Part shown: piece after piece, positions 4,485 to 55,323 of the stretch
Numbering within the stretch: the first letter of the stretch is position 1
Layout of the letters: the number at the start of each line of letters is the position of its first letter
IMG/VR virus record: IMGVR_UViG_3300023174_000033
Location: 372,001-436,000 of that record
Length of the DNA stretch: 64,000 nt
Reading direction: 5' to 3' (one strand)
The notes under the pieces: generated by a model
Told to the model about the DNA's origin: nothing
The model's input: the letters and a program-made list of their open reading frames with translations, nothing else
Database searches by the model: none
Made by a program: the position numbers and the translations under genes

Positions 4485-4500
4485 CCACAAGGCGATATGG
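3760..4500 (+). repeat. Coding tandem repeat, ~81-bp unit, ~9 copies
   Basis: Same unit as 1840-2340, counted in the translation. Confidence 0.85.
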
Positions 4501-7090: not shown

Positions 7091-7108
7091 AATAAATAAT
7101 TTTATTTT

Positions 7109-7819
7109 ATGAAAAAAATCTATGTGTTAAATCATCCAGAGGGTAAGGGATTACTCAGGCGGAAATATATGGAGGAATCTCTTTCAAGAGAAAATCTTGA
7201 ATTTGAATTTGTAGATGGATATCATCCTAACGATTTTGATTATGAAAAGTTAATCAAAAACTGGAATATTGTAAATGCTCGTTTTGTAAACAGCCACACT
7301 GGATCCAGATTTGAACCAATATACGTTGAATCAACTAACCATGTCCCATACATAACCTTTCCTACTCATATAGGCAAGGGGTCAATAAGTCTCGTACTCA
7401 AACATAAACATTGTTGGTACGATCAAATATTCAATAAGTACGAATATGTGACTATATTTGAAGATGATTGTGAAATACCAAACAATCTAGAAGACATTTT
7501 AGAGGAGTGTATATCGGAAATGAAAGAAAACCAATATGATATAGTTATGTTGGGTGGTTTACCGGGAATGGTTTCTCCAAATTTTGCAGAAGGGAAAAAA
7601 GTACATTATCATCAACATCAAAAATGTAGATGCACTCATGGATACATTTTAAATTTAGACACTGCTAAAATATTCTTGGAAACCTCTGGAATAATAAACA
7701 ATTCTATTGATATTAAATTGAATGAAATTATACAAATTTTCAATTTAAAAGTTGCTTGGTTAGAGCCAGCATTGATTCCAATATTTGAAGAAAGTTTGAC
7801 AGAAGAAACCGGTAGATAA
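7109..7819 (+). CDS. Glycosyltransferase family 25
   Basis: KIYVLN...R...FEFVDG, SLVLKH, IFEDDC, THGYIL, IDI pattern. Confidence 0.8.
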   Translation: MKKIYVLNHPEGKGLLRRKYMEESLSRENLEFEFVDGYHPNDFDYEKLIKNWNIVNARFVNSHTGSRFEPIYVESTNHVPYITFPTHIGKGSISLVLKHKHCWYDQIFNKYEYVTIFEDDCEIPNNLEDILEECISEMKENQYDIVMLGGLPGMVSPNFAEGKKVHYHQHQKCRCTHGYILNLDTAKIFLETSGIINNSIDIKLNEIIQIFNLKVAWLEPALIPIFEESLTEETGR

Positions 7820-11033: not shown

Positions 11034-12068
11034 TTAAGATATTTCCTTCAATTTTATGAAAAGTTCTCGTTGAGAATCATTTATATTTTTTGGTATGGAA
11101 ACTTTTATTTTCACATAAAGATTGCCAGTTCCATTTGTTTGTCCGTTCTGCATTAGTCTTGGTATTCCCTTGTTTGGAACTGTGTATGTTTTCCCACTTT
11201 CACAACCAGCAAATATTTGCAATATAGATTCACCAAGTGGAGTTTTTATTTTTAAATTTGTACCTAATACGGCATCGTATATACTTATAGTTTCTTCGGA
11301 ATGGAGATCATTTCCCTCTCTTTTAAATTTGTCACTTGGTATTTCTTCAATCATTACCTGTAAATCACCAGGAGTACCTTGTCTAATGTGATTACCATAT
11401 CCTTGCATATTGAATGTCATACCACTAGCAACACCTTTTGGTATATTTACTTCAACTAATTCATCTTTAGAAGAAGTTCCATTTCCATTACAGGTTGAAC
11501 ACCTATTATAAATCGTTCTACCCTCTCCATTACACATATTACAAGGTATTTGTTGGGTTATTGTACCAAAAGGTGTATTTTGAATTACTCTTCTAACTCC
11601 CGATCCATTACATCCTTGACAAGTTCTTTCATCAGTTCCACCTTTTCCATTACAAGGATCACATTTTGTTTGTCTTTTGTATTTTATTTTTTTAATTGAT
11701 CCTTGAATTACCTCTTCTAAAGTTACCTGTACTTGAATTCTCAAATCACCACCCCTACGAGTTCTTTGGTTAGTGAAAGCTCCACCGAAAGGATTTCCAA
11801 AAATATCTCCAAACTGACTGAATATATCATTCATATTGAATCCACCACCACCAAATCTACCTCTATTTGGATCACCACCAAACATATCATACTCCTGTCT
11901 TTTTTGATCATTAGATAATGTTTCATAAGCTTCGGCGGCTTTCTTAAATTTTGTTTCGTCCCCACCTCTGTCAGGATGATATTCTAAAGCTTTCTTTCTA
12001 TAAGCCTTTTTAACATCATCTTGTGATGCAGATTTATCAATCCCTAATATATCGTAATAACTTTCCAT
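11034..12068 (-). CDS. dnaJ: DnaJ chaperone
   Basis: J-domain HPD, G/F-rich region, four CxxCxGxG zinc motifs, C-terminal domain. Confidence 0.97.
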
Positions 12069-12098
12069 ATAAAATATATCTTATTTTTATTTATTTGT

Positions 12099-13785
<1,687 letters not shown>

Positions 13786-15079: not shown

Positions 15080-17089
15080 TTAGTTAATTCTTATTTCCCT
15101 CCATCTATTGTATTGAGCATCATTGCCACTGATTTCAATAACTCTACCAGTGCGGTTGATTGGGATATTCATACGAACTTTACCACTCGTTGTGGTGAAT
15201 ACTTGAACACCATCAACAAATACTGATAAGCTTAGAATTGGTGAACCCCAAGTTGATCCGGATAAAAATCCAGACCAAACATTAATACTTGGAATGTTCC
15301 TTGAAGCTGACAGAGTACATTGTATCCTTGATGGTCCTGTTGTTACCCATCTTGAATTATTTGTGGCGGTGTCACCATCTCTGATTAATAATGTATCACC
15401 AGCATATCTTGTACCAGTACACTTCCAAACAATTGTGCCAGTTGGAGCCGTGGAAGTTTTAAAAGTAAGCTGTGTGCCATAAGCAGTTCCGCTTGAATTA
15501 GTTGCATAAGCTCTCACATAGTAAGTTGTATTTGAGGTTAGTCCAGTTATTGAGCTCACATAAGAACCAACACCACTTCCGTTTACTGTTTTAGTCGTGA
15601 GTGACACCGTAGGATTCTGTGCGGTTGACCAAACAACTCCCCTAGCAGTAACAGTTGCGCCACCATCCGCAGTTACATTACCACCAGTGGTAACTGAATT
15701 TGTGGTTATATTACCGACCGTAGTTGTTGTAATAGTTGGTAAAACAATACCAGTGGAACAAGCTTGTACAGTAACTTGTGTCGGATAGGAATTACATCCC
15801 GATGGACTACCAGTCGCTGTTCTTGTTTGATATCCGTTAACACAAGGGCCCCAAGGTCCATAAGTCCAAGAGGTGCAAATACCAGTGCCGGTTCCGGGAA
15901 CTGTTGATACATTCAAAGTCTGTTGCATAACAGCGGCACAAGTTGGGTGAAAACCTAATGATAATTTAAGTGTTCCGTTTAAGTGACAATAACTCATAAT
16001 TGTACCACCCAATTTAGGATTCTTTATGGTAGTTCCACAATTATAAGAATTGTAAGTTTCACCACCATAACAAGAATCTAATCTACCAACTCCACCATTT
16101 GGTAAAGGCCAACCACACCATTGAGTATGTTTTGAACCATAAGAGTGACCCTCTTCGTGACTCACTACATAAATAGACCAAGCATAATCATTAGTTATAG
16201 TCAATGTGTTGTAGATACCCGATACTGCGGTATTATAAAGACCACCTCTGCCAACTTGACCTATGTAAGCAATTCCACCATAATTTTTGTTTGTTAGTAA
16301 GTGTTTCAAGTCAACATCTGTCCTTGAGGTATAATCTGTTGTAAATTGAGACAATGCTGAAAATGATGAAAGTATTTTGTAATAATTGGAAGTGTCTGTT
16401 AATATTTGCACTTCTTTTATCTTATTATTGATTCCAATCCTATTATAATAAACCAATTTTGCAGCTTGTAAGTTAGCAACAAAATTCGTAATATTTTGTG
16501 TATTTCTTGCGAAGTTTACATACATATCAAAATCCACCACATAAAGTATATCAGCAACTTTATTACTAATCGCGACAGCTCCTCCAGTCACTGTCTGTCC
16601 CGTAGATGGTGTTTGACCTTCAGTGGGCGAATAATTTAGATTTGGAGTTTTGTAATCAGGGGGTAATGCGGGTTCTTCTGTTTCAAGGGGAATTTGTGTC
16701 TCACTTGGTTGTACTAATCCCTCATCTGTGATGTTTAATCCATCCATTGTGCCCAGTACTCCACTCTCGGTTATTGTTAAAACACCCTCTCTACCATTCT
16801 TGGTAATTTTGAAGTGTTTTGGTTTTTTCACTTTTACTTGTTTTTTACCTTCAGTAACAATAAAGTCAGGTAGTGTGAATTCCTCCGCATCAACGTCAAG
16901 TGTATCAGATAACTTTATTTTAACCTTCTTAAAAGATTTTATCTTCGTGTGGTTCTTTTTGTTAATTTGCTTTTTTGGGGTTCCTTGACTTTTCCCAGAA
17001 TTTACAACTTTCACTTCATAAAGGTCAATGACTTGACCATAGGAAATAAAAGATAAAAACAGAAAAAATAAAAGTAGTAGTTTTTTCAT
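15080..17089 (-). CDS. Secreted reprolysin-like (M12B-type) zinc metallopeptidase with TSP1-like and Fn3-like domains
   Basis: Signal peptide MKKLLLLFFLFLSFISYGQ; VSHEEGHSYGSKHT zinc motif; IMSYCH Met-turn; WTYGPWGPC (TSP1-like); GLTSNTTYYVRAYATNSSGTAYG (Fn3-like). Confidence 0.85.
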   Translation of the reverse strand: MKKLLLLFFLFLSFISYGQVIDLYEVKVVNSGKSQGTPKKQINKKNHTKIKSFKKVKIKLSDTLDVDAEEFTLPDFIVTEGKKQVKVKKPKHFKITKNGREGVLTITESGVLGTMDGLNITDEGLVQPSETQIPLETEEPALPPDYKTPNLNYSPTEGQTPSTGQTVTGGAVAISNKVADILYVVDFDMYVNFARNTQNITNFVANLQAAKLVYYNRIGINNKIKEVQILTDTSNYYKILSSFSALSQFTTDYTSRTDVDLKHLLTNKNYGGIAYIGQVGRGGLYNTAVSGIYNTLTITNDYAWSIYVVSHEEGHSYGSKHTQWCGWPLPNGGVGRLDSCYGGETYNSYNCGTTIKNPKLGGTIMSYCHLNGTLKLSLGFHPTCAAVMQQTLNVSTVPGTGTGICTSWTYGPWGPCVNGYQTRTATGSPSGCNSYPTQVTVQACSTGIVLPTITTTTVGNITTNSVTTGGNVTADGGATVTARGVVWSTAQNPTVSLTTKTVNGSGVGSYVSSITGLTSNTTYYVRAYATNSSGTAYGTQLTFKTSTAPTGTIVWKCTGTRYAGDTLLIRDGDTATNNSRWVTTGPSRIQCTLSASRNIPSINVWSGFLSGSTWGSPILSLSVFVDGVQVFTTTSGKVRMNIPINRTGRVIEISGNDAQYNRWREIRIN

Positions 17090-25701: not shown

Positions 25702-25736
25702 GATGATAGAATTATTTTTTCGTAAGGTATATATAC

Positions 25737-25768
25737 AAAAAAAGTCCCCAAGTTTGGGGACTTTTTTT
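25737..25768. terminator. Bidirectional intrinsic terminator
   Basis: AAAAAAAGTCCCCA-AGTT-TGGGGACTTTTTTT. Confidence 0.85.
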
Positions 25769-25785
25769 ATTACTCGTAAATAGTG

Positions 25786-28700
25786 TTATTCAACAATGAG
25801 TGTTTTAGTCACACAAGTTTTTGGAGTTTCAACTTTGATAAAGTATTGTCCTTTTTGTGTTGGTTTTGAAACCTTCACAGTATTAGATTTGAAAAATCCA
25901 TTGGATACTACTCTACCCATTACATCGGTGACAACAATTTTAACACTACCAGATTTCTCAGGTACTCTTACTGTGATGTTATCAGATTTTACTGGGTTTG
26001 GATAAACACTTACAAAATCATTTTTGTTAAGGTCATTAACACTTGTCAATGCATTTGTGAAAATGATTTCAAATCTATCATTGAATTCACCAGATTGGGA
26101 ATAAAAACTAATTGTGTTCCCAGTGATTTCGGTGATAATACCATTGTAATTATCTTTTAGATACATTTTATTATATCCATTCACAAGATTAATACCATCA
26201 AATTGGAATCCGTAAGTGCCAGAGTTTCTAACAGTGAATCCAAGTGGAATGTTCATTGTTTCATCTGTACCAGGCATTGCGTTGATTGCCAATTTCTCAT
26301 TACCAACCATCGTATAAACGTTAAGGTCAGGATTCATCAATTTACTAGCGTCGAGTGAAGTTTCATATCCACTCTCGGAACCTTCCACGAATTGGAAAAG
26401 AGATGCATCAATATGACTGTTTTCATCTTTCAATCTGATTTCAAGCGCATTTTGTTGATTATCAGTAGCAGTTCTGAAAAATGAACCACTAGATAGAGCT
26501 TTAGCAGTCTGTGGAATAGTCAATGTAGAAGCTGATGTACACTTTACAAAGAAAGCTTGACCTGAAGCGATTGGAGAAATAGAACTGTTCAGAGTAACAC
26601 CAGTCAATCCACCAACAGTACCTTGATATTCGTATTGATTAGTGATTGGATTCCAAATAACAACTACTTGTTGAACACCCGCTCCCCAAGAAAATCCAGA
26701 TGTATTTACAGCGGAAAGGTGTGGGTTCATTACAAGGTTCCAACCAGGATAGCTTGAAGATCCATTGTAATTAAGAGTAATTGCACTTGGGTTCATACCG
26801 TAAGTGCCAGTATTGTCAAGAGTTCTGCCAGATTTGATATAAACTCTATATCCTTTATATTGGTCGATATTAGAAGTGACTGGCACAATCCAACCTTTTG
26901 TGGTAGTACTACTGTAAGGTACTGCATCATTATTATTTTGGTCATACTCATAAATCATAGAGGTAAAATACCCTGGGTTTGGAGTATGAACACCTGGCAT
27001 AGGTCCTTGTGTTTCAGCACCTGGTAGGTCATCACGCCAGTCGCTAAGTGATTGACCAGACATAACAGTTCCGGTAAAGTGCCAACCATCATTAGCAACA
27101 TATCTTTCGGATGTAATGTTTCCAGATATTGTCCCAGTAGAATTAGCTATTCTCGCAGTCGAACTGCCAGTAGATTTTAAAATAATTACACCATTTGAGT
27201 TGAGTGTGCCAGATGTCACAGTCAAAGAACCAAATACATCAATCTTAGAAGCCGGTGTTAGGGTAACAGACGTACCTTGACCAGCAGTGATATCAGTAAG
27301 TAAGTTTCCTACTTGAATATTACCATTTATTCCAGTTGAGATGCCACAAGAATAACCAGCAGTTGTGTTATTATTTCTTGCATAAATTGTTCCTCCAACA
27401 GTTAAATTACCATTGACTGTTAGTGTACCACCTCTCTGACCAGTAGCAGCTCCATCAAAGCCATCAAGAGCAAAATCAGTAGTTGCATCAGACATATTTA
27501 GTGTTTTACCCTCCATTACAGTGGTATTGAGGACTGAGTTATCTACGTTTGAATATATACCAGCACCTCCAGTAAACCTAACATTAACATTTGAGTTAAT
27601 GAAAAGTGATGTTTGTTGGTTAATAACAGTATTTTTCCTCATACGACCAATATCTGTTGTACCATTACCTTTGATAAAGATGGTGTTTCCTTCAAGGCCA
27701 AAACAAATTGGGTTATAAGTAGCACCAGTTCCAATAACACCATTGTTGCTGATATCACCATTGATATAAAGAAACTTGTTATCAGCAGTTGTAGTTCCGG
27801 TTGCAATCAAAGTACCACCTTGATTTACAATTAGTTCTCTACAAGTAACTGCAGATCCACTCTGTGATAGTTGAACAACATCACCATTTTGAATAACAAG
27901 ACCTCTAGCAGTATTCATACCACCAATTGCAGCTAGTGTAGATGGTGTTCCTGTTGGGGAAAGTGACCAAATAGCATCAGTGTGAGAAAGACCAGAACCC
28001 CTTGAATAGATGTTTACAAGAGTTGGAGTAGCAGTTACCTCAACACCAGGACTATATTGAGATCCGAACTTTACAAAAATCTTGAAATAGTAAAGTTGGT
28101 TAAGTGTAAGACCAGTAATAACTTGTGGTGAAGCAGTACCAGTATAAACTACACGACCACCACCAATAAAAGCGGGAGCGGCTGCGTAGTTAGTATTACC
28201 AAAATATGTACCACTTGGAGTACCGGTGATTGAAGATGTATGTGCTACAATAACAATTTGAGATACACAAGCTGGGTTTGTCCAAGAAAGTTGAACAGTT
28301 GGTTGACCACCAACAGCATTTGGTGAAGCAACATCATCTAAAACACCAGCAGAAGTTGTAACAGTAGAACCAGCACTTGGTGTTCCTACTTTTACAGAAA
28401 GAGGATTACTATAAGTAATACTAGTAAGTGATGTAGATGTGATGTTGATTGAGTTACCAACAGATGCACAACCACTTACAGAAGCAACTACAAAAAGATA
28501 TCTTGTTGTTCCAACTGGGATATTCTGTCCAATACCAGTGAATGCCAAAGTCTGACCAGCACCAGTACTTGTTGAGATTGTAGAAAGAACTGGGTCAGTA
28601 ACATCATAAGTACCATCAGTAGAAAGTACCAATTTGAAACTTGTGAAGTCAGAAGATGCGTAAGAACCAGCAGTTTTTACAGTTATACCAGTTAAAAGAG

Positions 28701-30828
28701 CATTACCATCAGCAACATCTAATTGAACACTATAAATAGGTTGTGATGTTCCTTGAGCAGCACTTGAAACAGGTGTTGTGAAAGTGTGAGTGATTGTAGG
28801 TGTTGGTACATTTACAGGAGCAAATGATACACCTTTAAAAAGAACCTGTGTTGAAGCAGGTGATGTAATGATTGGAGAACCAGAAGCTGTAATGATATCA
28901 GAACCTGAACTTGTAATATTAGCAGTTACTGCTGAATTATCAGTAAACTTATAGATTTCATTAGCAGGTGATGTGGTTGATCCAAGACAGATATAGAGAA
29001 CTCTATTTCCACCTACAACTTGAACACCAATACCGTGCACAGTTCTACCAGTTGGATTTGGAAGATTTCCTCTTTTTGTCCAAACACCACCAGTATTTGA
29101 GAACTTAACAACACCTTGAGTTGCTGTTGCATTAGCATCAGCTACATACATAACATCAGGTGTTCCATTATCATCAACATCAGCGAAAACAAAACCTCTT
29201 GGGTCAAGTAGTTCTGTATTTGATGTAGTTCCACTCAAAATTGTGTGTGTATTTCCTGTGGTTGTTGGAAGACCAGCACCAACTGTTGAAATACCAATGT
29301 TCACAGATTGAGCACTTGAATAAAGTTGTGAGTTGTAAATAGCAGTTCCCCTAGTATTCACAGTAGTTGTTGAAACTTGGGTAGAAGTAGAAGCACCAAG
29401 TGCAACATATCTTGTACCACCACCAGTTCCAGCACCTCCTGTCCAGAATGCACTACCATCAACAGTAGCAGCTGAACGAATTGAGTTACCATCATAACCA
29501 TCACTAATACGAGTTGAAGTATTGATTGTACCATTTTGAGTAACCCTAGCAACAATCCTATTTGTTCCAGTAGCAGTACTTGAACTAATACCAATAACAC
29601 CTGGGATGTTATCATACCCACCAAAAGTAAGATATTGACCATCAGGTGAAAGGTTAAGGAAACCTTCGGTTGTAGAAGTACCACTCATAGTGAACTTCCT
29701 ATTTGAACCACTTGTTACAAATGGCATTGGTACACTTTGTACTAAAGTACCTGTGGTGGTGTATTCATCAATGAACACAGGTGCTGAATTTGTTGATAAA
29801 GTTGTACCACCAACTTCACCAACACGAAGAGTTAGGATATTACCAGCAGTGAAAGCAGAACCACCAGAATAAATCTGACCAGTTACAGCCCTTGAAATAG
29901 TTGGTGCTGGTGAAGATACAAAATCAACATTTCCAGTATATGTACCAACGGATGCTGATGTAGTAAGTTTAGCAAAAACTGTGGTTGCTGATACATTACC
30001 ACCAGATTGGTTTAGTGTTAAACTAGATGAAAAAGGACCAGTTGATGAAGTTGAGAATTCATATCCAGAAAGTGTACCCACGGTGATGTTGTTGGTTAGG
30101 TTATTACCACTTACTGATACCGATTGAACTTCTGAACCAAGACCAGAATTTCCATAAAACTTAGCAAATGTTCCAGTAACAGTGACTGTAGGCACAGGTA
30201 AAAAACCAGTTAGAGTAATATCATCAAGTCTAGTTGATGCAGTACCAGCTTTTAACCACCTAAGTTTTAGTCCATTGATTTGACCAGCAACTGGGATGGA
30301 GATTGCAGGTGATTGATACCAAGCAACAGCCGCAGTAGCTGTTTGAGAAAAGGTAAATGGAATATTTACCCAAGCAGTACCATTCCAATAATCTACTGTT
30401 AGTGTAGGTAATACTGTTGCACTTTCTTTTCTATATCCAAATTGGAGTGATAGAGAAGTGTAGGCAGATGCGTTTATACCCTCAATTGCAAAACCATACT
30501 GACCACTAGTGGAAGTTAAGAATACATTACCACCAGCCGAAGCACCAGTGTAACCGGTTGAAGTACTGGTGTTTCTGATATCACCAGGAGTTGTTGCTCC
30601 ACCACTTGTCATAGTAAGAGCAGTGTTTGTGAAACCGTTAGCTGTTTCATGAGCAGCAATTGTAGTAGTTGCAGAAGGTGTACCCATGGTTTCTTGAGTA
30701 ATAACGGGGGATTGCCCAAACACAGTAGGGGCACAAAAAAGTCCTGAGATCAGGACAGCGCAGAAAAGGGACAATACGTTACTAAATCCTGTTCGGAAAT
30801 TAGTACAAAAATTGTAAAGGTGTGACAT
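25786..30828 (-). CDS. Large secreted multidomain protein with T9SS type-A C-terminal sorting domain
   Basis: N-terminal signal peptide; Thr/Ser/Gly-rich beta domains; GWNLVMNP; C-terminal SVYPNPVKSDNITV...DVMGRVV...KGQYFIKV. Confidence 0.85.
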   Translation of the reverse strand: MSHLYNFCTNFRTGFSNVLSLFCAVLISGLFCAPTVFGQSPVITQETMGTPSATTTIAAHETANGFTNTALTMTSGGATTPGDIRNTSTSTGYTGASAGGNVFLTSTSGQYGFAIEGINASAYTSLSLQFGYRKESATVLPTLTVDYWNGTAWVNIPFTFSQTATAAVAWYQSPAISIPVAGQINGLKLRWLKAGTASTRLDDITLTGFLPVPTVTVTGTFAKFYGNSGLGSEVQSVSVSGNNLTNNITVGTLSGYEFSTSSTGPFSSSLTLNQSGGNVSATTVFAKLTTSASVGTYTGNVDFVSSPAPTISRAVTGQIYSGGSAFTAGNILTLRVGEVGGTTLSTNSAPVFIDEYTTTGTLVQSVPMPFVTSGSNRKFTMSGTSTTEGFLNLSPDGQYLTFGGYDNIPGVIGISSSTATGTNRIVARVTQNGTINTSTRISDGYDGNSIRSAATVDGSAFWTGGAGTGGGTRYVALGASTSTQVSTTTVNTRGTAIYNSQLYSSAQSVNIGISTVGAGLPTTTGNTHTILSGTTSNTELLDPRGFVFADVDDNGTPDVMYVADANATATQGVVKFSNTGGVWTKRGNLPNPTGRTVHGIGVQVVGGNRVLYICLGSTTSPANEIYKFTDNSAVTANITSSGSDIITASGSPIITSPASTQVLFKGVSFAPVNVPTPTITHTFTTPVSSAAQGTSQPIYSVQLDVADGNALLTGITVKTAGSYASSDFTSFKLVLSTDGTYDVTDPVLSTISTSTGAGQTLAFTGIGQNIPVGTTRYLFVVASVSGCASVGNSINITSTSLTSITYSNPLSVKVGTPSAGSTVTTSAGVLDDVASPNAVGGQPTVQLSWTNPACVSQIVIVAHTSSITGTPSGTYFGNTNYAAAPAFIGGGRVVYTGTASPQVITGLTLNQLYYFKIFVKFGSQYSPGVEVTATPTLVNIYSRGSGLSHTDAIWSLSPTGTPSTLAAIGGMNTARGLVIQNGDVVQLSQSGSAVTCRELIVNQGGTLIATGTTTADNKFLYINGDISNNGVIGTGATYNPICFGLEGNTIFIKGNGTTDIGRMRKNTVINQQTSLFINSNVNVRFTGGAGIYSNVDNSVLNTTVMEGKTLNMSDATTDFALDGFDGAATGQRGGTLTVNGNLTVGGTIYARNNNTTAGYSCGISTGINGNIQVGNLLTDITAGQGTSVTLTPASKIDVFGSLTVTSGTLNSNGVIILKSTGSSTARIANSTGTISGNITSERYVANDGWHFTGTVMSGQSLSDWRDDLPGAETQGPMPGVHTPNPGYFTSMIYEYDQNNNDAVPYSSTTTKGWIVPVTSNIDQYKGYRVYIKSGRTLDNTGTYGMNPSAITLNYNGSSSYPGWNLVMNPHLSAVNTSGFSWGAGVQQVVVIWNPITNQYEYQGTVGGLTGVTLNSSISPIASGQAFFVKCTSASTLTIPQTAKALSSGSFFRTATDNQQNALEIRLKDENSHIDASLFQFVEGSESGYETSLDASKLMNPDLNVYTMVGNEKLAINAMPGTDETMNIPLGFTVRNSGTYGFQFDGINLVNGYNKMYLKDNYNGIITEITGNTISFYSQSGEFNDRFEIIFTNALTSVNDLNKNDFVSVYPNPVKSDNITVRVPEKSGSVKIVVTDVMGRVVSNGFFKSNTVKVSKPTQKGQYFIKVETPKTCVTKTLIVE

Positions 30829-31040
30829 AAAGTTTTTTTTGTTTTTGTAAAGTTATTTTTTTTTAAGTTTTGTGATTAATTCGGCAGAACCAAAACTACT
30901 AACATTTTGCCGAATGAATCTTTACTTTTAACACAAATTAGCACCACCAAAATTTGCGACATGGCTTAGACTCAAAACCAAAATATATATCGCCCAAAAA
31001 AGGTTTAGTTTAGAAAACCTGGATTTATTATCCATACGAA

Positions 31041-31319
31041 TTAAAGGCCTAATAATTTAGACTTTAGAACAGCTTGAAAAACATTTTTCACTTCGTACTT
31101 TTCTACCGAATCCTTCCGATATTCTTTTTCAGAATTATTGAACTCATTAATCTCACCTATGTAAGCAACTACCATTTCTGAATTGTTATTTTCTACTTGG
31201 TTGTGATAAGTGTTGTAACTCGACCAAGTTTTAATTCTTGAAATAGTATAACCCTCCTTAATAAGGAAATTTATCATTTCATCGTCTGTAAAATATAAAT
31301 TAATCATACTCATAATCAT
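31041..31319 (-). CDS. Hypothetical protein
   Basis: Start reassigned to the ATG overlapping the stop of 31316..31453. Confidence 0.6.
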   Translation of the reverse strand: MIMSMINLYFTDDEMINFLIKEGYTISRIKTWSSYNTYHNQVENNNSEMVVAYIGEINEFNNSEKEYRKDSVEKYEVKNVFQAVLKSKLLGL

Positions 31320-31453
31320 AGAAATAAAGATAATATAATGCCCAAAGAAGTTAAAAATACAATAGATATGGCCATTATTCCAATTAGCAATGAACATCCT
31401 GTAACCGAAATCATTAATAAGTCACCAAGTAAATTTTTCCTCCCATCATTCAT
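31316..31453 (-). CDS. 45-aa membrane peptide (below the ORF-track cutoff)
   Basis: MNDGRKNLLGDLLMISVTGCSLLIGIMAISIVFLTSLGIILSLFL; TATATTTG 5 nt upstream. Confidence 0.6.
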   Translation of the reverse strand: MNDGRKNLLGDLLMISVTGCSLLIGIMAISIVFLTSLGIILSLFL

Positions 31454-32196: not shown

Positions 32197-32721
32197 GTGA
32201 AATTCATTAAAAGTTATAAAATTTTTGAGGCAGATGGTACTTTTATGTATGACCCATCAATTGAAAGTATATTACCAGAATATATTAAGATAATTAAGGG
32301 GAATCCAAAAAACCCACTTAGATTAGCTTATAAAAAAGGTATATCAAGACACCTAGGACCAGAAGTTCAAATACCATATGAAACGATGGATAAGAATGGT
32401 GGTAGGGAAAATCCAGACACTTTAGAATTTGACATATATTGGAACTACGATACAAATACTAGTAGTTTAAATATAAATGTCGAAGTAAATTATGGTGATT
32501 TAACTGCTTGTCAATTCTCCATAGAAGCTCCTAATAAAGTTGATGTGATAGTATATACCTCATTACACTCAAAAGATGACCCATCAAATACCGTGTTTGC
32601 AATAGACGATGAAAGTTTGCAATCATTCTGTAATTACATCAACAAATGGGATCATGGTATCCATATAAATCGCGAAGATTTGAAGTTTATGGACAAGTAC
32701 GATAATTACTTACCTACTTGA
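32197..32721 (+). CDS. Hypothetical protein with N-tag variant (KFIKSYKIFEA)
   Basis: GTG start; TAATATATA at 32183. Confidence 0.7.
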   Translation: MKFIKSYKIFEADGTFMYDPSIESILPEYIKIIKGNPKNPLRLAYKKGISRHLGPEVQIPYETMDKNGGRENPDTLEFDIYWNYDTNTSSLNINVEVNYGDLTACQFSIEAPNKVDVIVYTSLHSKDDPSNTVFAIDDESLQSFCNYINKWDHGIHINREDLKFMDKYDNYLPT

Positions 32722-33956
32722 TTTCTATCCCAAGTTTCAATTCCAAGAATGTGATACACTTTATCACTTGGATCCTCTACTAAATCCTTCCTAATGGCCA
32801 ATTCCATAAGTAACAATTCCATTTCGTCGTTCAAATCATGGGATTCCAAATCATAGTTCTCAAGTATCTTTATACCTATAAGTGGGTCTTTTTGAAACTT
32901 TGATATAATCATATCAAATATTTCAATTTGTTTTGACAGAGACTTACCCCGCAAGTTCCTTGAGGAATTAGGTGCATGGTTTACCAACTTTGACAGTTTC
33001 TCTATATTAACGTTTTTTGGGTTTACGTCAAAATATCCATTGAAAGTTAAAGAAGAATCAATTATAGGGTGTAATTTGTACCAAGCTTTTTCATAGTCTT
33101 TCTTATGAAGAATATTTCTCATATAATAAAGATAATCCTTTGAAAGATGAAGTCCACTTATATCATCTTTCTTGTATTTATCACTATCCACTTTTGATTC
33201 TAAAGACCAGATATGATCACTTGACCCATAATTTGAGAGTAAGTAAACTTCCAAATCTTTTTCTCTAACCAATTTGAACCTTGATTTTAGGTCAGATTGA
33301 TATTTTTTGAACATTTTAGCATATCTGTCTTTGAATCTATACTTATGACTATCGATAAAACACCTACTTCCAATAATAGTAGCAATCAAATCCAATTCTA
33401 TCTCTGGTAAAGTAGCTTCCAAATCATACTTTTTCTTTACTAATCTGATAGCAGAGTGTGGTGGTGAACTTAAATTACAAAGACGCAACTCACCAGTTTT
33501 CAAAAATTCCTCAAAATCTTTTGTCCAAATAAATTGATCAGTTTCAATATCGTATCCAAGTTGACAAGAGTTTATATCAAATGAATCTAGTACTAGAGAT
33601 TTATCATCCGTGGTGGAAAAATATTCAATATTGTTATAAATACCATCTACAGACACTTTCTCAATAGTGTAGTAACCCTTTTGTTGATATCCTATATTAA
33701 GACCGGTGTAATCTTCATAAACCCATTTTTCATTTCTAATAAAATGTTGCTTTGATTTTAACTCTCTATTTGTAAAATCCTTTTTGACACCAATCAGATG
33801 ATAGATATCTAAATCATTCACTGGTGCATTCTTACCAGATATTATATTCCATACCACATTTCCGATTGATCCTCCTGCTAGAAAACCAGATTTTGGAAGT
33901 TCCCATTTTGATTTGATTTGGTCAAGTGCTTGACGAAAGATTTCTTGATATTTCAT
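32706..33956 (-). CDS. Pol-beta-superfamily nucleotidyltransferase-like protein
   Basis: GFLAGGS...NDLDIY and VLDSFDINSCQLG resemble the CCA/poly(A) polymerase head domain. Confidence 0.55.
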   Translation of the reverse strand: MKYQEIFRQALDQIKSKWELPKSGFLAGGSIGNVVWNIISGKNAPVNDLDIYHLIGVKKDFTNRELKSKQHFIRNEKWVYEDYTGLNIGYQQKGYYTIEKVSVDGIYNNIEYFSTTDDKSLVLDSFDINSCQLGYDIETDQFIWTKDFEEFLKTGELRLCNLSSPPHSAIRLVKKKYDLEATLPEIELDLIATIIGSRCFIDSHKYRFKDRYAKMFKKYQSDLKSRFKLVREKDLEVYLLSNYGSSDHIWSLESKVDSDKYKKDDISGLHLSKDYLYYMRNILHKKDYEKAWYKLHPIIDSSLTFNGYFDVNPKNVNIEKLSKLVNHAPNSSRNLRGKSLSKQIEIFDMIISKFQKDPLIGIKILENYDLESHDLNDEMELLLMELAIRKDLVEDPSDKVYHILGIETWDRNQVGK

Positions 33957-38191: not shown

Positions 38192-39022
38192 TTATAAATC
38201 TGAAATTACAATAGTTTTTACAACTTTTATTCCAACGTCTCCAGGCAGTATTGTAATCACTAAAATTTCATTGTTATTGTTTTTCATAATACCATCTACA
38301 TCAATCACAATAATAATAGAAACATTATACTCTTCAAAATAAAATGAATATCTACCAGATACTAAAATTTCCTTTCCAATCATTGATGGGAATATCTTAT
38401 CTAAAAACCTTTTGAATATCCCATTGAAATGTTTTATTGATTGAAATGAACTTCTTTCAGCAATTCTTTTAGTTAAGTCATGTTCTGATGTATTATACCA
38501 CTTTACTTTGAATAATAACTTTTTACCATTCCACCTTTGTTTACAAGTATGCTGACTTACAAGTTTAACATCTGGTTCAGCTGGTGGTGGATTTAATTCT
38601 TTTGGTAGGTCTTTTATTAGATCAGCTAGTCTTGCTTCATTAACTTCAAGTGTGTCACTTAACATTTGTTTAACACCGTCCAACCCATCACACTTATAAT
38701 AATAACTATCAAATGTATTTTGATTGTAATCTTCAATAAAATACCAATCGTCATCATAGTGGAAAATGAAAATGACTTGATCTTTATTTATTGAAGTGTG
38801 GTAATATTCACTTGTGTTTGTTTGATAAATTTGTACTTTTGGCCAGTCTGGTGTTTTGTTGGATGGATCAAATATTTTTTTGAACAATCTTTCCAATCTT
38901 AATCTTTCTGATTCATTTACCCCATCATATTTAATTTTTGATGTTATATCACTGAATTTTCCCCTAGTAATTTTCTCATATTCACCACTACCAAATACAT
39001 CAAAACTTTCCAAATATTTCAT
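38192..39022 (-). CDS. N-tag family protein (two-domain)
   Basis: MKYLESF; DDDWYFI...YYKCDGLDG family motifs; TAATATATA at 39028. Confidence 0.75.
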   Translation of the reverse strand: MKYLESFDVFGSGEYEKITRGKFSDITSKIKYDGVNESERLRLERLFKKIFDPSNKTPDWPKVQIYQTNTSEYYHTSINKDQVIFIFHYDDDWYFIEDYNQNTFDSYYYKCDGLDGVKQMLSDTLEVNEARLADLIKDLPKELNPPPAEPDVKLVSQHTCKQRWNGKKLLFKVKWYNTSEHDLTKRIAERSSFQSIKHFNGIFKRFLDKIFPSMIGKEILVSGRYSFYFEEYNVSIIIVIDVDGIMKNNNNEILVITILPGDVGIKVVKTIVISDL

Positions 39023-39068: not shown

Positions 39069-39581
39069 TTATTTATATCCTATTCCAAAGGCGACGACTT
39101 TGTCTTTTATAGATATTTGTTCTTGTTTGGAAAAATCCCATTCAATAACATAAGTGCCACTCTTACTAGCCAAAAAATCAAAGGTCTTTTTATTCTTGTC
39201 ACCTTTGTTTGATAAGAATAGTTTTCCATCGGCATCATATAAATTTATAGTCACAGGATGGGTGAACCCTGTTGATAAATCAACAATTCTGTATGGCTCA
39301 TTTGAATAAAGATCAAATGTAGCTTTTACAATAGCTTTATCCTTAAATTTACTATAGTCCTGTGATACAGAAGATTCATACTTATACTCACCTAACTTTT
39401 TTATACAATCATATTTTATAGTTCTACCACCATCAATTTGGTAAAAATCCATAAAAGAAGCAGAAATCTGAAATTCCTGATTCACAACATTCTCAAATTT
39501 GGGATCACTTACCCTAAACTGACTGTAGATGGATGTAACAATTAGAGTCACCAAGGCCATCAAAAACGAATTGTTTTTCAT
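39069..39581 (-). CDS. Hypothetical exported protein
   Basis: Signal-peptide-like N-terminus. Confidence 0.65.
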   Translation of the reverse strand: MKNNSFLMALVTLIVTSIYSQFRVSDPKFENVVNQEFQISASFMDFYQIDGGRTIKYDCIKKLGEYKYESSVSQDYSKFKDKAIVKATFDLYSNEPYRIVDLSTGFTHPVTINLYDADGKLFLSNKGDKNKKTFDFLASKSGTYVIEWDFSKQEQISIKDKVVAFGIGYK

Positions 39582-39714: not shown

Positions 39715-40155
39715 CTAAAAATTTTCCTTTAAACACTCCTCAACACCTTCGATAGTATCACAAACCCACATTCTTGAATTTACATTTCTTGAACCAGGTG
39801 TCTCTGGTATAAAACATTCAATCAACCATATATCATCTTCCAGTTTTTGAATAACCAGATCGCATTTAAAAGGTATATCTAAATCAAAAACATATTCCCT
39901 TCTGTAATCAGTTAAACCTTCTCTATGAGTCATTTCATACTTTTGTTTATCTACATGAGCTAATGGAAATCCTTTGGATCTAATATACTCCTCTACAAAT
40001 CTATCTAAATTTTTATCTTCTTTTGGTGTTATATCATCTTGGTGACCCCAATATTCTAATTGTTCATAACTATGGGCAGTTAATCTATTATAGATCTTTC
40101 CTTCTAATTTATCATATGCTGATAGATTTTCATTAAATCTTTTTAAGTATTTCAT
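39715..40155 (-). CDS. N-tag paralog family protein
   Basis: MKYLKRFNE; EDDIWLI; WVCDTIEG. Confidence 0.75.
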   Translation of the reverse strand: MKYLKRFNENLSAYDKLEGKIYNRLTAHSYEQLEYWGHQDDITPKEDKNLDRFVEEYIRSKGFPLAHVDKQKYEMTHREGLTDYRREYVFDLDIPFKCDLVIQKLEDDIWLIECFIPETPGSRNVNSRMWVCDTIEGVEECLKENF

Positions 40156-40589
40156 AACCACTTATCAAGTAATATTTTAAGTGAATCAAATTCATCACAT
40201 TCATAGTATTCAGAAAATCCATCAATTGTAGTTTCTTCATCAAAAATATCATCACCTTGAAATATACGAACATAATACCAATCATCCTTATTTTTGTAAC
40301 AATCAAAACAAATTAAATTAGCATTTCCACCATTTGAATACATATAAATAACAAAATTATCTGGAAGTTCTTTTTTATCCGAAGTGAATCTGTTGTAGAT
40401 AAAACTAGAACGATTATTATATTCCACATCTTCTATTTTTCTACTCTTATCAAATACAGATTCTAAATATAAAAGTTCTTTTTCAGTAAAATAATCTCTT
40501 GTCTTTTTTTCTGGATAAAAATCTTCATAGGAAATATTTTTAGGTTCAGCAGGTCCAAACATATTTTCAAATAACTTTAGATATTTCAT
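40152..40589 (-). CDS. N-tag paralog family protein
   Basis: MKYLKLFEN; KDDWYYV; YYECDEFDSL. Confidence 0.78.
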   Translation of the reverse strand: MKYLKLFENMFGPAEPKNISYEDFYPEKKTRDYFTEKELLYLESVFDKSRKIEDVEYNNRSSFIYNRFTSDKKELPDNFVIYMYSNGGNANLICFDCYKNKDDWYYVRIFQGDDIFDEETTIDGFSEYYECDEFDSLKILLDKWL

Positions 40590-41035
40590 TTAAGTTTAGC
40601 TTCTTTTTTTAAAAGATTTAATAAACAATCAAACCCATCACATTCATAATATTCTTCATAACCTTCAAAATATCCTTCATCACTATCCCAATTATCTTGA
40701 TAAAAACTTACTAAAAACCATTCATCTTTACATTTTTGGACATGAACTTCAAATGGATATGGATTGCCTTCATCATAAGTTGGTAGATAAAAAGTTAAAT
40801 AAGTAAGACCAATTCTGTAATAATCAACTTTTTCACTTAATCCAAGATTATCCCATTCTTCTTCTTCCATATGGCAACGGTCACTATCTTCCATTAAATT
40901 AACAAGGGTTTCCATTTCAGATTTACTGAAAAACTCCTTACCCAAAGATTTTAAAAGTCTTGACCATTCACTATTGGTGATTTTTTTTGGTTCAGCAGCT
41001 CCAAATATGCTTTCAAATCTTTTTAAGTATTTCAT
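40586..41035 (-). CDS. N-tag paralog family protein
   Basis: MKYLKRFES; KDEWFLV; YYECDGFD. Confidence 0.78.
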   Translation of the reverse strand: MKYLKRFESIFGAAEPKKITNSEWSRLLKSLGKEFFSKSEMETLVNLMEDSDRCHMEEEEWDNLGLSEKVDYYRIGLTYLTFYLPTYDEGNPYPFEVHVQKCKDEWFLVSFYQDNWDSDEGYFEGYEEYYECDGFDCLLNLLKKEAKLK

Positions 41036-41469
41036 AGGTTTAAAAGTTCTTCTAATTTTTCTATTAAGTCTTCAAATGTGCTACATTCGAACTTTCTAAC
41101 AACCTCATCACCACCTTTTTCATCAAATTCAGCATAACCCAAATAAAACCAATCAGGATCATCCACCTTATCCCTTTTTGAAATTTCAATTGCTTTTACA
41201 ATATATTTCCCCCTTGGGTAGTTACTGGTTTTCTCTACTTTTCTAAAATCATTAATAGTATAATGGGTCTTATCATAATTTAATTCCAATAACCTATCAT
41301 ATTCTAAACTCAATTCATACCTTCTTATAAAATCAGACATCTGTTCTATTTCAGAAGTGGTGAATTCTGATAAAGTAACTGACCTTGAATTCACCCTTCT
41401 CCACCAATCATCGAAGTCGAGTTCAGTTGAACCAGAATAAAAGTTTTCAAATCTTTTTAAGTATTTCAT
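41032..41469 (-). CDS. N-tag paralog family protein
   Basis: MKYLKRFEN; PDWFYL; FECSTFEDL. Confidence 0.78.
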   Translation of the reverse strand: MKYLKRFENFYSGSTELDFDDWWRRVNSRSVTLSEFTTSEIEQMSDFIRRYELSLEYDRLLELNYDKTHYTINDFRKVEKTSNYPRGKYIVKAIEISKRDKVDDPDWFYLGYAEFDEKGGDEVVRKFECSTFEDLIEKLEELLNL

Positions 41470-41472
41470 AGT

Positions 41473-41898
41473 TTATTGTATTTTTAATAAGTTCAAAACA
41501 GAATCAAACCCATCACATTCATAATATTCTTCATACTCATAGTAAACTTCCCCTTCTTCATCTTGATACTCATCTTGATAAAAACTAACCATAAACCATT
41601 CATCTGGACACTTTTGTATATGAACCTCTATTGGTAGAGGATTAACATCACCACCTCCAATATAATAAGTTAGATAAGTAAGACCAATAACAAAATTATC
41701 TAACTTTTCACTCCAACCAAGATTATCCCATACTACTTGTTCTCGACCACTACTTTCCATTAAGTCAATCAAAGTTTTATGCTCTGATTTGGTAAAGAAA
41801 TCTTTTCCAGATTTAATTTTAATTGACCATTGACGTTCACTTATCTGTTTAGCTTCAGCAGGTCCAAACATAGATTCAAATAATTTCAGATATTTCAT
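41473..41898 (-). CDS. N-tag paralog family protein (first of a 5-gene array)
   Basis: MKYLKLFES at 41898; TAATATATA at 41903. Confidence 0.78.
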   Translation of the reverse strand: MKYLKLFESMFGPAEAKQISERQWSIKIKSGKDFFTKSEHKTLIDLMESSGREQVVWDNLGWSEKLDNFVIGLTYLTYYIGGGDVNPLPIEVHIQKCPDEWFMVSFYQDEYQDEEGEVYYEYEEYYECDGFDSVLNLLKIQ

Positions 41899-41962
41899 TA
41901 AGTATATATTAAAATTTTTTATATTTTGCAAAACATTAGAAATAACAAGAATATAAGGTGAT

Positions 41963-45669: not shown

Positions 45670-45721
45670 ATTATCATTTATATTATTAAACTATAAAATG
45701 TTAAGTGAGTATAACATTATT

Positions 45722-55266: not shown

Positions 55267-55323
55267 CAAATAAAATCTGTAAACAAAGAGGGCTAATAAT
55301 ATAAAATATTAAGATATATAAAA

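What the first reader, a model, noticed from the sequence alone, without database searches (positions are those of the whole stretch)
25786..30828. 1680-aa T9SS cargo protein encoded by a phage
Seen: Sec signal plus a type-A C-terminal sorting domain (YPNP..G.Y), with propeller-like and Fn3-like beta domains and no recognisable catalytic site. It has its own ATATATA element and terminator. Known: CTD proteins are exported only by the Bacteroidota type IX secretion system and are often anchored to the surface. Inference: the phage uses the host T9SS to display or release a large adhesin-like protein, for receptor masking, aggregation or grazer defence. It also points to a T9SS-positive host.
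Basis: partly seen in the sequence, partly recalled or inferred. Interest (0 to 1): 0.65.

Follow-up and report, generated by a model that had tools for sequence, protein, structure and literature searches.

The report
Megaphage-encoded host-derived T9SS surface protein
A 464-kb phage of Bacteroidota carries a 1680-residue gene, copied long ago from its hosts, for a non-enzymatic binding protein that carries the address tag of the host's type IX secretion system, so infected cells probably display it on their surface; one published case of phage-encoded cargo of this kind already exists.

Summary
Window 25786-30828 (-) is one 1680-aa ORF with a Sec signal peptide and a type-A T9SS sorting domain (TIGR04183 38.4 bits, cut-off 23). 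AlphaFold models (pLDDT 84) show a six-bladed propeller, Ig/Fn3-like sandwiches and a parallel beta-helix. No enzyme family matches.

The genome is a 464,605-bp virus record (CheckV 98%). Its terminase is 63-64% identical to the 634-642 kb 'Mahaphage' genomes, which are predicted to infect Bacteroidetes.

It is not a chimera. Five independent assemblies carry the gene at the same phage locus, and its GC3 (0.19) is phage-like.

New points:
- About 30 phage copies form one clade (SH-aLRT 100) among bacterial copies from Cytophagales, Chitinophaga and other Bacteroidota.
- The bacterial copies sit in a conserved cluster with an LTD protein, a phytase-like propeller and an OprO/P-type porin.
- Its modules recur in ExeM/NucH-type extracellular nucleases.
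- The last ~380 residues match the Flavobacterium adhesins RemA and RemZ.
- The phage has three more CTD genes.
- The four published 634-735 kb phages carry one to three each.

Export through the host T9SS is well supported. The purpose is inferred: I favour surface capture of extracellular nucleic acid or organophosphate over receptor masking. Phage-encoded T9SS cargo was already reported for 'Cryophage' in 2020, so this is a new member of a known kind.

The parts
25786..30828 (-). Whole 1680-aa ORF (P0001), including the stop codon
   Evidence: about 55 full-length homologues at 40-85% identity
30715..30828 (-). Sec signal peptide, aa 1-38. Predicted SPase I cleavage is at ...VFG|Q, with Gln at +1.
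   Evidence: Read from the sequence. The G|Q junction is conserved in phage and bacterial copies.
30199..30714 (-). N-terminal jelly-roll beta-sandwich 'tip' domain, aa 39-210. It is replaced by other domain types in some phage copies.
   Evidence: AF2 model. It is 54% identical to the N-terminus of Hymenobacter T9SS proteins. Atlas leads point to F5/8-C, Cleaved_Adhesin and MAM. Tip swapping is seen. The domain also occurs in an EEP-family hydrolase, P0080.
29869..30189 (-). Ig-like beta-sandwich, aa 214-320
   Evidence: AF2 model pLDDT above 90; repeated in the nuclease-annotated P0083
28807..29850 (-). Six-bladed beta-propeller, aa 327-674
   Evidence: VIA-align: 1npe Z 22.8, LDLR/LRP YWTD, TolB, NHL. 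It is 40% identical to the N-terminal propeller of an ExeM/NucH nuclease and 42% identical to Hymenobacter T9SS proteins.
28345..28797 (-). Beta-sandwich domain, aa 678-828. This is the most conserved part of the family.
28015..28293 (-). Fn3-like domain, aa 846-938
   Evidence: AF2 secondary structure; aligned to Fn3-bearing proteins P0063 and P0078; Foldseek hits to Fn3 receptors
27064..28014 (-). Right-handed parallel beta-helix, aa 939-1255, with no invariant acidic residues
   Evidence: VIA-align: Vag8 7akv Z 14.8, SRRP 5nxk Z 14.4, tailspikes and polygalacturonases Z about 13; invariant columns
26056..26955 (-). Two beta-sandwich domains before the CTD, aa 1292-1591 (RemA/RemZ-like C-terminal region)
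   Evidence: Family profile against PDB sequences: RemZ 8gl8_D E 8.7e-46, RemA 8gl6_D E 1.9e-42. The same module occurs in many T9SS proteins with other N-termini.
25789..26007 (-). T9SS type-A C-terminal sorting domain, aa 1608-1680
25735..25770 (-). Intrinsic terminator hairpin (A-run, 16-bp stem, T-run), 16 nt after the stop codon
   Evidence: -21.9 kcal/mol, z -6.0; sequence
30983..30990 (-). ATATATAT element 155 nt upstream of the ATG. It is a copy of the genome-wide promoter-like motif, at an atypical distance.
30891..30898 (-). TAGTTTTG, which matches the Bacteroidota -7 promoter consensus TAnnTTTG, 62 nt upstream of the ATG. It may be a chance match.
   Evidence: Sequence. I estimate about 0.1 chance matches per 200 nt. 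The consensus is recalled from the literature and was not tested here.
39069..39581 (-). Second CTD-bearing ORF in the window (170 aa, with a signal peptide)
   Evidence: TIGR04183 23.5-24.8 bits; N-terminus

Best explanation
The gene is a host-derived auxiliary gene fixed in a lineage of Bacteroidota-infecting megaphages.

Route. The protein is made in the infected cell and crosses the inner membrane by Sec. Signal peptidase I cuts it before Gln39. Its type-A C-terminal domain then hands it to the host's T9SS translocon (PorV/SprA). It probably stays on the cell surface through a C-terminal region homologous to the Flavobacterium adhesins RemA and RemZ.

What it is. The exposed part is a non-catalytic chain of binding modules: a jelly-roll tip, an Ig-like domain, a six-bladed propeller, a beta-sandwich, an Fn3-like domain and a beta-helix.

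Likely role. Because it keeps the full architecture and the invariant residues of its bacterial orthologues, it most likely does the same job as they do. Those orthologues lie in a conserved cluster with a lamin-tail-domain protein, a phytase-like propeller and an OprO/P-type porin. Their modules recur in ExeM/NucH-type extracellular nucleases. I therefore favour capture of extracellular nucleic acid or another organophosphate polymer at the surface. That would help supply phosphorus and nucleotides to a phage that must replicate 464 kb per virion.

Shown: gene, signal peptide, CTD, folds, phage origin, single phage clade, bacterial gene neighbourhood, module sharing.
Inferred: T9SS export, surface retention, ligand, benefit to the phage.
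My confidence is about 0.9 for export by the host T9SS and about 0.4 for the scavenging role.
For: - CTD: it scores above the curated cut-offs and has the CTD fold.
- Signal peptide: the G|Q junction is conserved.
- No phage T9SS parts: the phage genome has no PorV, SprA or PorU.
- Phage identity: virus record, CheckV 98%, TerL 83 bits. TerL is 63-64% identical to LR756502 and LR745206, which are Mahaphages predicted to infect Bacteroidetes (PMC7162821).
- Same phage locus in independent assemblies: P0002, P0020, P0026 and P0043, with 14 flanking phage ORFs matched in L004.
- Native composition: GC3 is 0.189 against a phage median of 0.246.
- Single origin: the phage copies form one clade with SH-aLRT 100 among Cytophagales, Chitinophaga and other Bacteroidota clades.
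- Bacterial neighbourhood: the LTD, SdiA-regulated/phytase-like and Porin_O_P genes lie next to the orthologue, in full or in part, in at least nine loci from several families.
- A second captured gene: the phage's 437-aa Calx-beta CTD protein is about 42% identical to the gene adjacent to the orthologue in L006 (40% in L007). The bacterial protein weakly matches the ExeM/NucH N-terminus.
- Module sharing with nucleases: the propeller, tip and Ig modules co-occur with EEP (PF03372) and Endonuclease_NS (PF01223) catalytic domains in other proteins.
- RemA/RemZ homology of the C-terminal region.
- Precedent in Flavobacterium johnsoniae: OprP, an LTD nuclease and T9SS proteins belong to the low-phosphate response (PMC8115612).
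- Nucleotide genes nearby: purA and thyA lie in the window, and phoH lies elsewhere in the genome.
Against:
- The phosphate link rests on family names: Porin_O_P is a broad family, and NCBIfam gave only a weak hit to a different porin. The rest is guilt by association.
- No Pho box was tested.
- The phage carries none of the porin, LTD or phytase-like genes and no pstS.
- The tip domain is swapped among phage variants. That also fits an arms-race or adhesin role.
- The pre-CTD module is shared by many unrelated T9SS cargos, so homology to RemA does not by itself show surface retention.
- The promoter is not identified.
Confidence: 0.4

Rival explanations
1. Surface remodelling for the phage's own protection or spread. 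The displayed protein masks or displaces receptors to exclude superinfecting phages, or makes infected cells stick to particles or other cells.
For: - Export route and surface location are the same as in the best explanation.
- The beta-helix resembles autotransporter and serine-rich adhesins (Vag8, SRRP, pertactin, HMW1).
- The tip domain is exchanged among phage variants and with bacterial copies, as expected for a specificity or arms-race domain.
- The huge-phage paper suggests that phage-encoded surface proteins may affect superinfection (PMC7162821). Bellas et al. propose the same for Cryophage cargo.
Against: - The core of the protein evolves no faster than neighbouring phage genes: 66.8% identity against 37-78% for the flanking ORFs in L004.
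- It keeps every domain and the invariant residues of the bacterial orthologues. This argues for the ancestral function rather than a new masking role.
- In my experience, known exclusion proteins are usually small.
- Nothing was tested directly.
Confidence: 0.3
2. A RemA-like mobile gliding adhesin. The phage gives the host a new motility adhesin that rides the gliding track and changes where infected cells move or attach.
For: - The C-terminal ~380-540 residues are homologous to RemA and RemZ of F. johnsoniae (E 1e-42 to 1e-46).
- RemA is a T9SS-secreted mobile adhesin, and adhesins are proposed to stay on carrier proteins that are driven by the track (PMC10994853).
Against: - Homology is limited to the pre-CTD module and the CTD. 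That module is also found in peptidases, amylases and LTD proteins.
- No lectin domain like RemA's is found.
- The bacterial orthologues are linked to a porin cluster, not to motility genes.
Confidence: 0.1
3. A passenger gene with no role for the phage, or a decaying remnant of captured host DNA.
For: Huge phages carry many host-like genes. No functional data exist for this one.
Against: - The 5-kb frame is intact in about 30 phage-clade clusters spanning 48-85% identity.
- It sits at a conserved locus in several of them.
- Its codon third positions are phage-like, and it has its own terminator.
Confidence: 0.05
4. A virion tailspike or depolymerase, because of the beta-helix.
For: The beta-helix matches phage tailspikes at Z 12-14.
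Against: - An N-terminal Sec signal and a T9SS CTD would send the protein out of the cytoplasm, where virions assemble.
- The helix has no invariant acidic residues.
- The homologues are chromosomal bacterial surface proteins.
- No match was found in 50,697 phage records.
Confidence: 0.03
5. An assembly chimera or host contamination inside the phage contig.
For: Local GC is higher than in the flanks (0.38 against 0.30). Read mapping could not be done.
Against: - Both junctions recur in independent assemblies from other samples.
- The extra GC is in codon positions 1 and 2, from a Thr/Gly/Ser/Ala-rich composition. GC3 (0.189) is lower than the phage median.
Confidence: 0.02

Closest known systems
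T9SS type-A cargo proteins of Bacteroidota (TIGR04183 / PF18962; for example RgpB, mirolase, RemA)
   Same: It has a Sec signal peptide, a C-terminal ~75-residue sorting domain above the curated cut-offs, the CTD beta-sandwich fold and the conserved terminal Lys.
   Different: It is encoded by a phage genome that has no T9SS components of its own.
T9SS cargo genes of 'Cryophage', a 76-kb Bacteroidetes phage (Bellas et al. 2020, PMC7468147)
   Same: Both are phage-encoded proteins with type-A sorting domains that are presumed to hijack the host T9SS.
   Different: The Cryophage cargos are an endoglucanase, a GH39 enzyme and a PA14 protein, and they lie in hypervariable islands. This one is a 1680-aa non-enzymatic protein that is conserved at one locus across a megaphage lineage and has clear bacterial orthologues.
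RemA and RemZ of Flavobacterium johnsoniae (gliding adhesin and its homologue; PDB 8gl6 and 8gl8 chain D)
   Same: The last ~380-540 residues (two beta-sandwich domains plus the CTD) are homologous at profile E 1e-42 to 1e-46.
   Different: The N-terminal 1200 residues are unrelated, there is no lectin domain, and there is no evidence of movement on the cell surface.
ExeM/NucH-family and other extracellular nucleases
   Same: They share the six-bladed propeller (about 40% identity). The tip and Ig modules also occur next to EEP or Endonuclease_NS catalytic domains.
   Different: P0001 has no catalytic nuclease domain and no LTD.
Phosphate-related auxiliary metabolic genes of phages (for example pstS and phoA of cyanophages; recalled from the literature)
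   Same: If the favoured role is right, this is a host-derived gene that props up nutrient supply during infection.
   Different: It would act outside the cell, after export by a phylum-specific secretion system. The role is inferred, not shown.
Beta-helix adhesins (pertactin, Vag8, SRRP) and phage tailspikes
   Same: They share the right-handed parallel beta-helix fold (Z 12-15).
   Different: There is no sequence relationship, a different secretion route, and no conserved catalytic residues.

Membership tests
T9SS type-A cargo | C-terminal domain matches TIGR04183 / PF18962 above the curated cut-off | tested here: met
   38.4 bits against a cut-off of 23, and 35.2 bits against 27; 45.7 bits in the six-frame search
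T9SS type-A cargo | The CTD adopts the Ig-like beta-sandwich fold of solved CTDs | tested here: met
   Mirolase CTD 8qb1: Z 11.5, rmsd 1.7 A, 75 aligned; RgpB CTD 7pq4: TMt 0.56
T9SS type-A cargo | N-terminal Sec signal peptide | tested here: met
   The n, h and c regions can be read from the sequence. The ...FG|Q junction is conserved in the family. No dedicated predictor was available.
T9SS type-A cargo | The producing cell has a T9SS | tested here: inconclusive
   The host was not identified. The terminase relatives are phages of Bacteroidota or phages predicted to infect Bacteroidetes. All close bacterial homologues are from Bacteroidota.
T9SS type-A cargo | Secretion depends on the T9SS and the CTD is removed | not testable with these tools
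   This needs expression in wild-type and T9SS-mutant cells.
RemA-like gliding adhesins | Homology to the C-terminal region of RemA/RemZ | tested here: met
   Profile E 1.9e-42 (RemA) and 8.7e-46 (RemZ)
RemA-like gliding adhesins | Lectin domain and RemA-like N-terminal repeats | tested here: not met
   There is no Pfam hit other than the CTD. Homology does not extend upstream of profile position ~194.
RemA-like gliding adhesins | Movement along the cell surface and a role in gliding | not testable with these tools
   This needs live-cell imaging.
ExeM/NucH extracellular nucleases | Endonuclease/exonuclease/phosphatase catalytic domain (NF033681 / PF03372) | tested here: not met
   No hit at E up to 1 in Pfam or NCBIfam
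ExeM/NucH extracellular nucleases | Shared accessory modules | tested here: met
   The propeller is 40% identical to P0067 residues 181-517.
Phage tailspike / depolymerase | A cytoplasmic virion protein with a catalytic beta-helix | tested here: not met
   It has a signal peptide plus a CTD, the helix has no invariant acidic residues, and there is no homologue in 50,697 phage records.
Host-derived auxiliary gene of a phage | The phage copies nest within bacterial homologues | tested here: met
   There is one phage clade (SH-aLRT 100) among several bacterial clades. The root is not fixed, so the direction of transfer is inferred.
Host-derived auxiliary gene of a phage | A defined metabolic or physiological function that benefits infection | tested here: inconclusive
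   Only gene neighbourhood and module co-occurrence are available.

The most novel reading that the evidence does not exclude
Megaphages of Bacteroidota routinely load the host's type IX secretion system with their own cargo. This 1680-aa protein, together with the phage's 437-aa OB-fold/Calx-beta CTD protein, would rebuild on the infected cell a host-type surface device that captures extracellular DNA or organophosphate. That would make it the first auxiliary 'metabolic' function of a phage that works outside the cell through a phylum-specific secretion pathway.
Probability: 0.25. Interest if true: 0.7.

Novelty: new member of a known kind. Interest (0 to 1): 0.5.

Why it matters
Phage-encoded cargo for the type IX secretion system has been reported once, and was called unique at the time.

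Here the same principle appears in a near-complete 464-kb phage with four such genes, and in all four of the largest published phage genomes. It may therefore be a regular trait of megaphages that infect Bacteroidota.

This protein also has clear bacterial orthologues in a conserved gene cluster. Its function can therefore be studied in cultured bacteria and then tested for its effect on infection. If the scavenging role holds, it extends the idea of auxiliary metabolic genes to the cell surface. If the masking role holds, it gives a handle on superinfection exclusion in a phylum where little is known.

The sorting domain and the Gln after the signal-peptide cut are also practical markers for assigning uncultured phages to Bacteroidota hosts.

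Tried and rejected
- Related viral contigs: the search for related loci in viral contigs returned no relative.
- Phage collection: blastn and tblastn against it found nothing.
- Giant eukaryotic virus: considered because of the collagen repeats, DnaJ and size. The NCLDV capsid search was negative, but no control rang either, so that result is uninformative. The terminase and its relatives settle the question.
- Foldseek on the whole multi-domain models: it gave only generic receptor-like matches.
- Profile of the N-terminal 900 residues against PDB sequences: no hit.
- pstS: absent. phoH is present, but it is common in phages and not diagnostic.
- PorV, SprA and PorU: the searches were negative in the phage genome. 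The control genomes contain no T9SS organism, so the negatives are only weakly validated.
- NF052644 hit: the weak match of a bacterial neighbour to the T9SS surface endonuclease family (27.9 bits against a cut-off of 260) is probably driven by its CTD, so I did not use it as evidence.
- dN/dS: not attempted, because synonymous sites are saturated at 63-67% protein identity.
- Complex prediction (CTD with PorV): not run. The host PorV is unknown and a pass would not have changed my odds.
- The costly representative-protein search: not used, because the word search had already found the family.
Full report
**1. What is in the sequence**

Window 25786-30828 on the minus strand is a single ATG-initiated ORF of 1680 residues, P0001.

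Only one family model matches it, the T9SS type-A sorting domain at aa 1608-1679:
- TIGR04183 scores 38.4 bits (cut-off 23).
- PF18962 scores 35.2 bits (cut-off 27).

The N-terminus has a basic residue, an ~18-residue hydrophobic core and the junction ...VFG|Q. This junction, with Gln right after the predicted cut, is conserved in nearly all relatives, both phage and bacterial. From my own knowledge, it fits the 'Q-rule' described for signal peptidase I substrates of Bacteroidota.

Sixteen nucleotides after the stop codon lies a hairpin flanked by A- and T-runs (25735-25770; -21.9 kcal/mol, z -6.0).

The motif is real genome-wide:
- 135 of its 168 copies lie in the 6% of the genome that is non-coding.
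- A T-rich stretch followed by AATATATAA usually sits 10-35 nt before the first gene of a block. It is 19 nt before the terminase gene.

At this gene, however, the motif is 155 nt upstream, so assigning it as the promoter is tentative. A TAGTTTTG box (30891-30898) resembles the Bacteroidota -7 consensus but could be a chance match.

**2. Is it a phage, and is the contig sound?**

The window belongs to a single 464,605-bp contig. The tool identifies it as an IMG/VR virus record with CheckV completeness 98%. It has 32% GC and 7 tRNAs, and its ends fall inside a collagen-like repeat.

It encodes a large terminase (Terminase_6N, 83 bits). This protein is:
- 63-64% identical to the 642-kb and 635-kb genomes LR756502 and LR745206;
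- 40-42% identical to the 636-kb and 735-kb genomes;
- about 33% identical to Tenacibaculum phage PTm1.

The four large genomes are the largest 'Mahaphage' genomes of Al-Shayeb et al. [quoted passage not shown]

Three other lines exclude a chimera:
- The same gene lies between the same phage genes in independent assemblies from other samples: P0002 (85% identity, 170-kb contig), P0020, P0026 and P0043.
- In L004, 14 phage ORFs flanking the gene are matched in order.
- The locally raised GC comes from codon positions 1 and 2, reflecting a Thr/Gly/Ser/Ala-rich protein. GC3 is 0.189, below the phage median of 0.246.

**3. Architecture**

I folded two halves of the protein, each with an alignment of 30-31 homologues. 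Both gave pLDDT 84-85.

| Residues | Module | Evidence |
|---|---|---|
| 39-210 | Jelly-roll 'tip' | Leads to discoidin, cleaved-adhesin and MAM domains, score 0.89, lead only |
| 214-320 | Ig-like | |
| 327-674 | Six-bladed propeller | Nidogen 1npe Z 22.8; YWTD, TolB and NHL types; Bacillus phytase Z 17.6 |
| 678-828 | Beta-sandwich | |
| 846-938 | Fn3-like | |
| ~939-1255 | Right-handed parallel beta-helix | Vag8 Z 14.8, SRRP Z 14.4, tailspikes and polygalacturonases Z about 13 |
| 1292-1591 | Two beta-sandwiches | |
| 1608-1680 | CTD | Mirolase CTD Z 11.5, rmsd 1.7 A |

No enzymatic family matches in Pfam, NCBIfam or PDB sequences. The invariant columns of the beta-helix are almost all glycines.

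**4. Relatives**

The word search found about 55 full-length homologues at 40-85% identity, nearly all from metagenomes.

Their contexts split into two groups:
- Copies at or above 61-63% identity, plus the long-branched P0043, lie on phage or phage-like contigs.
- P0037 (a Catalimonadaceae MAG), P0038 and P0053 lie on bacterial contigs with ribosomal-protein and RNase P genes.

The species-genome scan found further bacterial copies in Hymenobacteraceae, Spirosoma, Chitinophaga and other Bacteroidota MAGs, mostly from lakes.

In an IQ-TREE of 44 sequences, the 16 rows I labelled as phage form one clade (SH-aLRT 100). Seven of these were verified by their gene context, and the rest were labelled by clade membership. 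The clade sits in a polytomy with several bacterial clades. The simplest reading is one old bacterium-to-phage transfer followed by vertical descent. The root is not fixed, so the direction of transfer is inferred.

Conservation is highest from the propeller to the start of the beta-helix, and lowest in the tip and the CTD. Within the phage clade the tip has been exchanged at least twice for other domain types that also occur in bacterial copies.

**5. What the bacterial orthologues suggest**

Next to the bacterial orthologues there is a conserved set of genes:
- a lamin-tail-domain (LTD) protein;
- an SdiA-regulated/phytase-like propeller;
- a Porin_O_P-family porin;
- often a small PID-CTERM protein and a Calx-beta CTD protein.

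The set, in full or in part, appears in L001, L002/L003, L006/L009, L007, L008, L010, L014, L015 and L039. It also lies near more distant relatives in two or three Flavobacterium genomes (L026, L029; partly in L027).

The phage has no LTD, phytase-like or porin gene. It does carry a 437-aa CTD protein about 42% identical to the Calx-beta neighbour in L006 (40% in L007). The N-domain of that phage protein is duplicated in the bacterial protein, and one of the two copies weakly matches the N-terminal part of ExeM/NucH nucleases.

Three modules of P0001 recur in proteins that carry nuclease catalytic domains of two unrelated families:
- The propeller occurs in P0062, P0067 (ExeM/NucH), P0071 (PF03372) and P0072 (PF01223).
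- The tip occurs in P0080 (PF03372).
- The Ig module occurs in P0083 (PF01223).

In F. johnsoniae, OprP, an LTD-bearing nuclease and T9SS proteins are part of the low-phosphate response (PMC8115612).

Together this points to surface capture of extracellular nucleic acid or organophosphate. It is an inference from association, not a test.

**6. The C-terminal region**

A profile of the C-terminal half matches the full-length sequences deposited for the T9SS translocon structures:
- RemZ (8gl8_D): E 8.7e-46, covering aa ~1300-1676.
- RemA (8gl6_D): E 1.9e-42.

RemA is the mobile gliding adhesin of F. johnsoniae, and RemZ is its homologue (PMC10994853). The same pre-CTD module occurs in many T9SS proteins with other N-termini, including peptidases, an amylase and LTD proteins. 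It therefore marks a class of T9SS cargo rather than a gliding function. I take it as weak support for retention on the cell surface.

**7. The wider phage picture**

The genome holds four ORFs with a type-A CTD above the cut-off:
- this one;
- a 170-aa ORF at window 39069-39581;
- a 541-aa discoidin-domain protein and the 437-aa Calx-beta protein, both just beyond the window.

It also encodes two further proteases. One is a reprolysin-like protease with a signal peptide ending in ...YG|Q. The other is an M43-like metalloprotease with a weak match to a lipoprotein metalloproteinase family.

It has no PorV, SprA or PorU, so the cargo must use the host machine.

The four published 634-735 kb phages each carry one to three ORFs above the TIGR04183 cut-off. 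Tenacibaculum phage PTm1 has none. The main text of the huge-phage paper does not mention secretion or the T9SS.

**8. Novelty**

Phage-encoded T9SS cargo was described for the 76-kb 'Cryophage', where three hypervariable cargo genes were called a unique occurrence (PMC7468147). My other full-text searches for T9SS cargo in jumbo or huge phages found no other such report.

This finding is therefore a new member of a known kind. What is new is:
- the size and non-enzymatic nature of the protein;
- its clear bacterial orthologues;
- its stable inheritance across a megaphage lineage;
- the recurrence of CTD genes in the largest known phages.

**9. Verdict**

Export by a Bacteroidota T9SS is very likely (about 0.9). 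The purpose is open. I favour nutrient or nucleic-acid capture that mirrors the host orthologue (about 0.4) over receptor masking or adhesion (about 0.3).

Noticed in passing
G000 contig ends; window 3-4484 (+) and 4497-6074 (+), 49398-52262 (-): Both ends of the 464-kb contig lie inside a collagen-like Gly-X-Y repeat, so the assembly probably broke in a repeat of a circular or permuted genome. The window holds several very long collagen-repeat ORFs; the one crossing the window start is 2227 aa in the genome. They match PHROG tail-fibre families through the repeat only.
   Followed up: partly
Whole genome; for example window 25721-25728 and 30983-30990: A promoter-like motif, a T-rich stretch followed by AATATATAA, lies 10-35 nt before the start codon of about a quarter of the ORFs, including the terminase gene. 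It recalls the T4 late promoter TATAAATA. Its class (early or late) was not determined.
   Followed up: partly
L047 (G000 436001-448000): 4096-5721 (-), 6381-7694 (-), 2534-3508 (-); window 15080-17089 (-): The phage encodes a small set of exported proteins: a discoidin-domain CTD protein, an OB-fold-like/Calx-beta CTD protein that is homologous to the neighbour of the bacterial orthologue, an M43-like metalloprotease, and a 669-aa reprolysin-like metalloprotease with a signal peptide ending in ...YG|Q.
   Followed up: partly
Records LR756502.1, LR745206.1, LR756504.1, LR756501.1: Each of the four largest published phage genomes (634-735 kb) carries one to three ORFs (140-522 aa) with a T9SS type-A sorting domain above the curated cut-off. 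The main text of the paper describing them does not mention secretion or the T9SS.
   Followed up: partly
P0011, P0012, P0029; P0026, P0028 (homologues of the window ORF): Within the phage clade, the N-terminal tip domain is replaced by two other domain types that also occur in bacterial copies (P0052/P0053 and P0047). This implies recombination between phage and host genes at the distal end of the protein.
   Followed up: partly
window 32706-33956 (-): A 416-aa nucleotidyltransferase-like ORF is conserved next to the cargo gene in related phages. The precomputed Pfam hits on its homologues name Gad2 (weak), which I recall as an anti-Gabija family, and NTP_transf_6. It may be an anti-defence gene.
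   Followed up: no
window 40152-41931 (-): Three of the five tandem ORFs of about 145-152 aa at 39715-41931 are paralogues of each other (30-60% identity). Two of them also match the 276-aa ORF at 38192-39022 more weakly. No family was found.
   Followed up: partly
window 11034-13334 (-), 45698-46762 (+), 55193-55397 (+): Host-like housekeeping genes lie in the window: a full DnaJ, adenylosuccinate synthetase (purA) and thymidylate synthase, plus tRNA-Ile(TAT) and tRNA-Met. phoH lies elsewhere, at G000 182576-183226.
   Followed up: no
window 31041-31397 (-): The 118-aa ORF directly upstream of the cargo gene is conserved in related phages (60% identity in L004). It scores exactly at the Pfam cut-off for Pho88 (25.0 bits), which is probably a chance match.
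   Followed up: no
Bacterial loci L002, L001, L014, L039: A ~75-aa ORF with a PID-CTERM sorting domain lies immediately downstream of the large CTD protein in several bacterial genomes. The phage has no counterpart.
   Followed up: no
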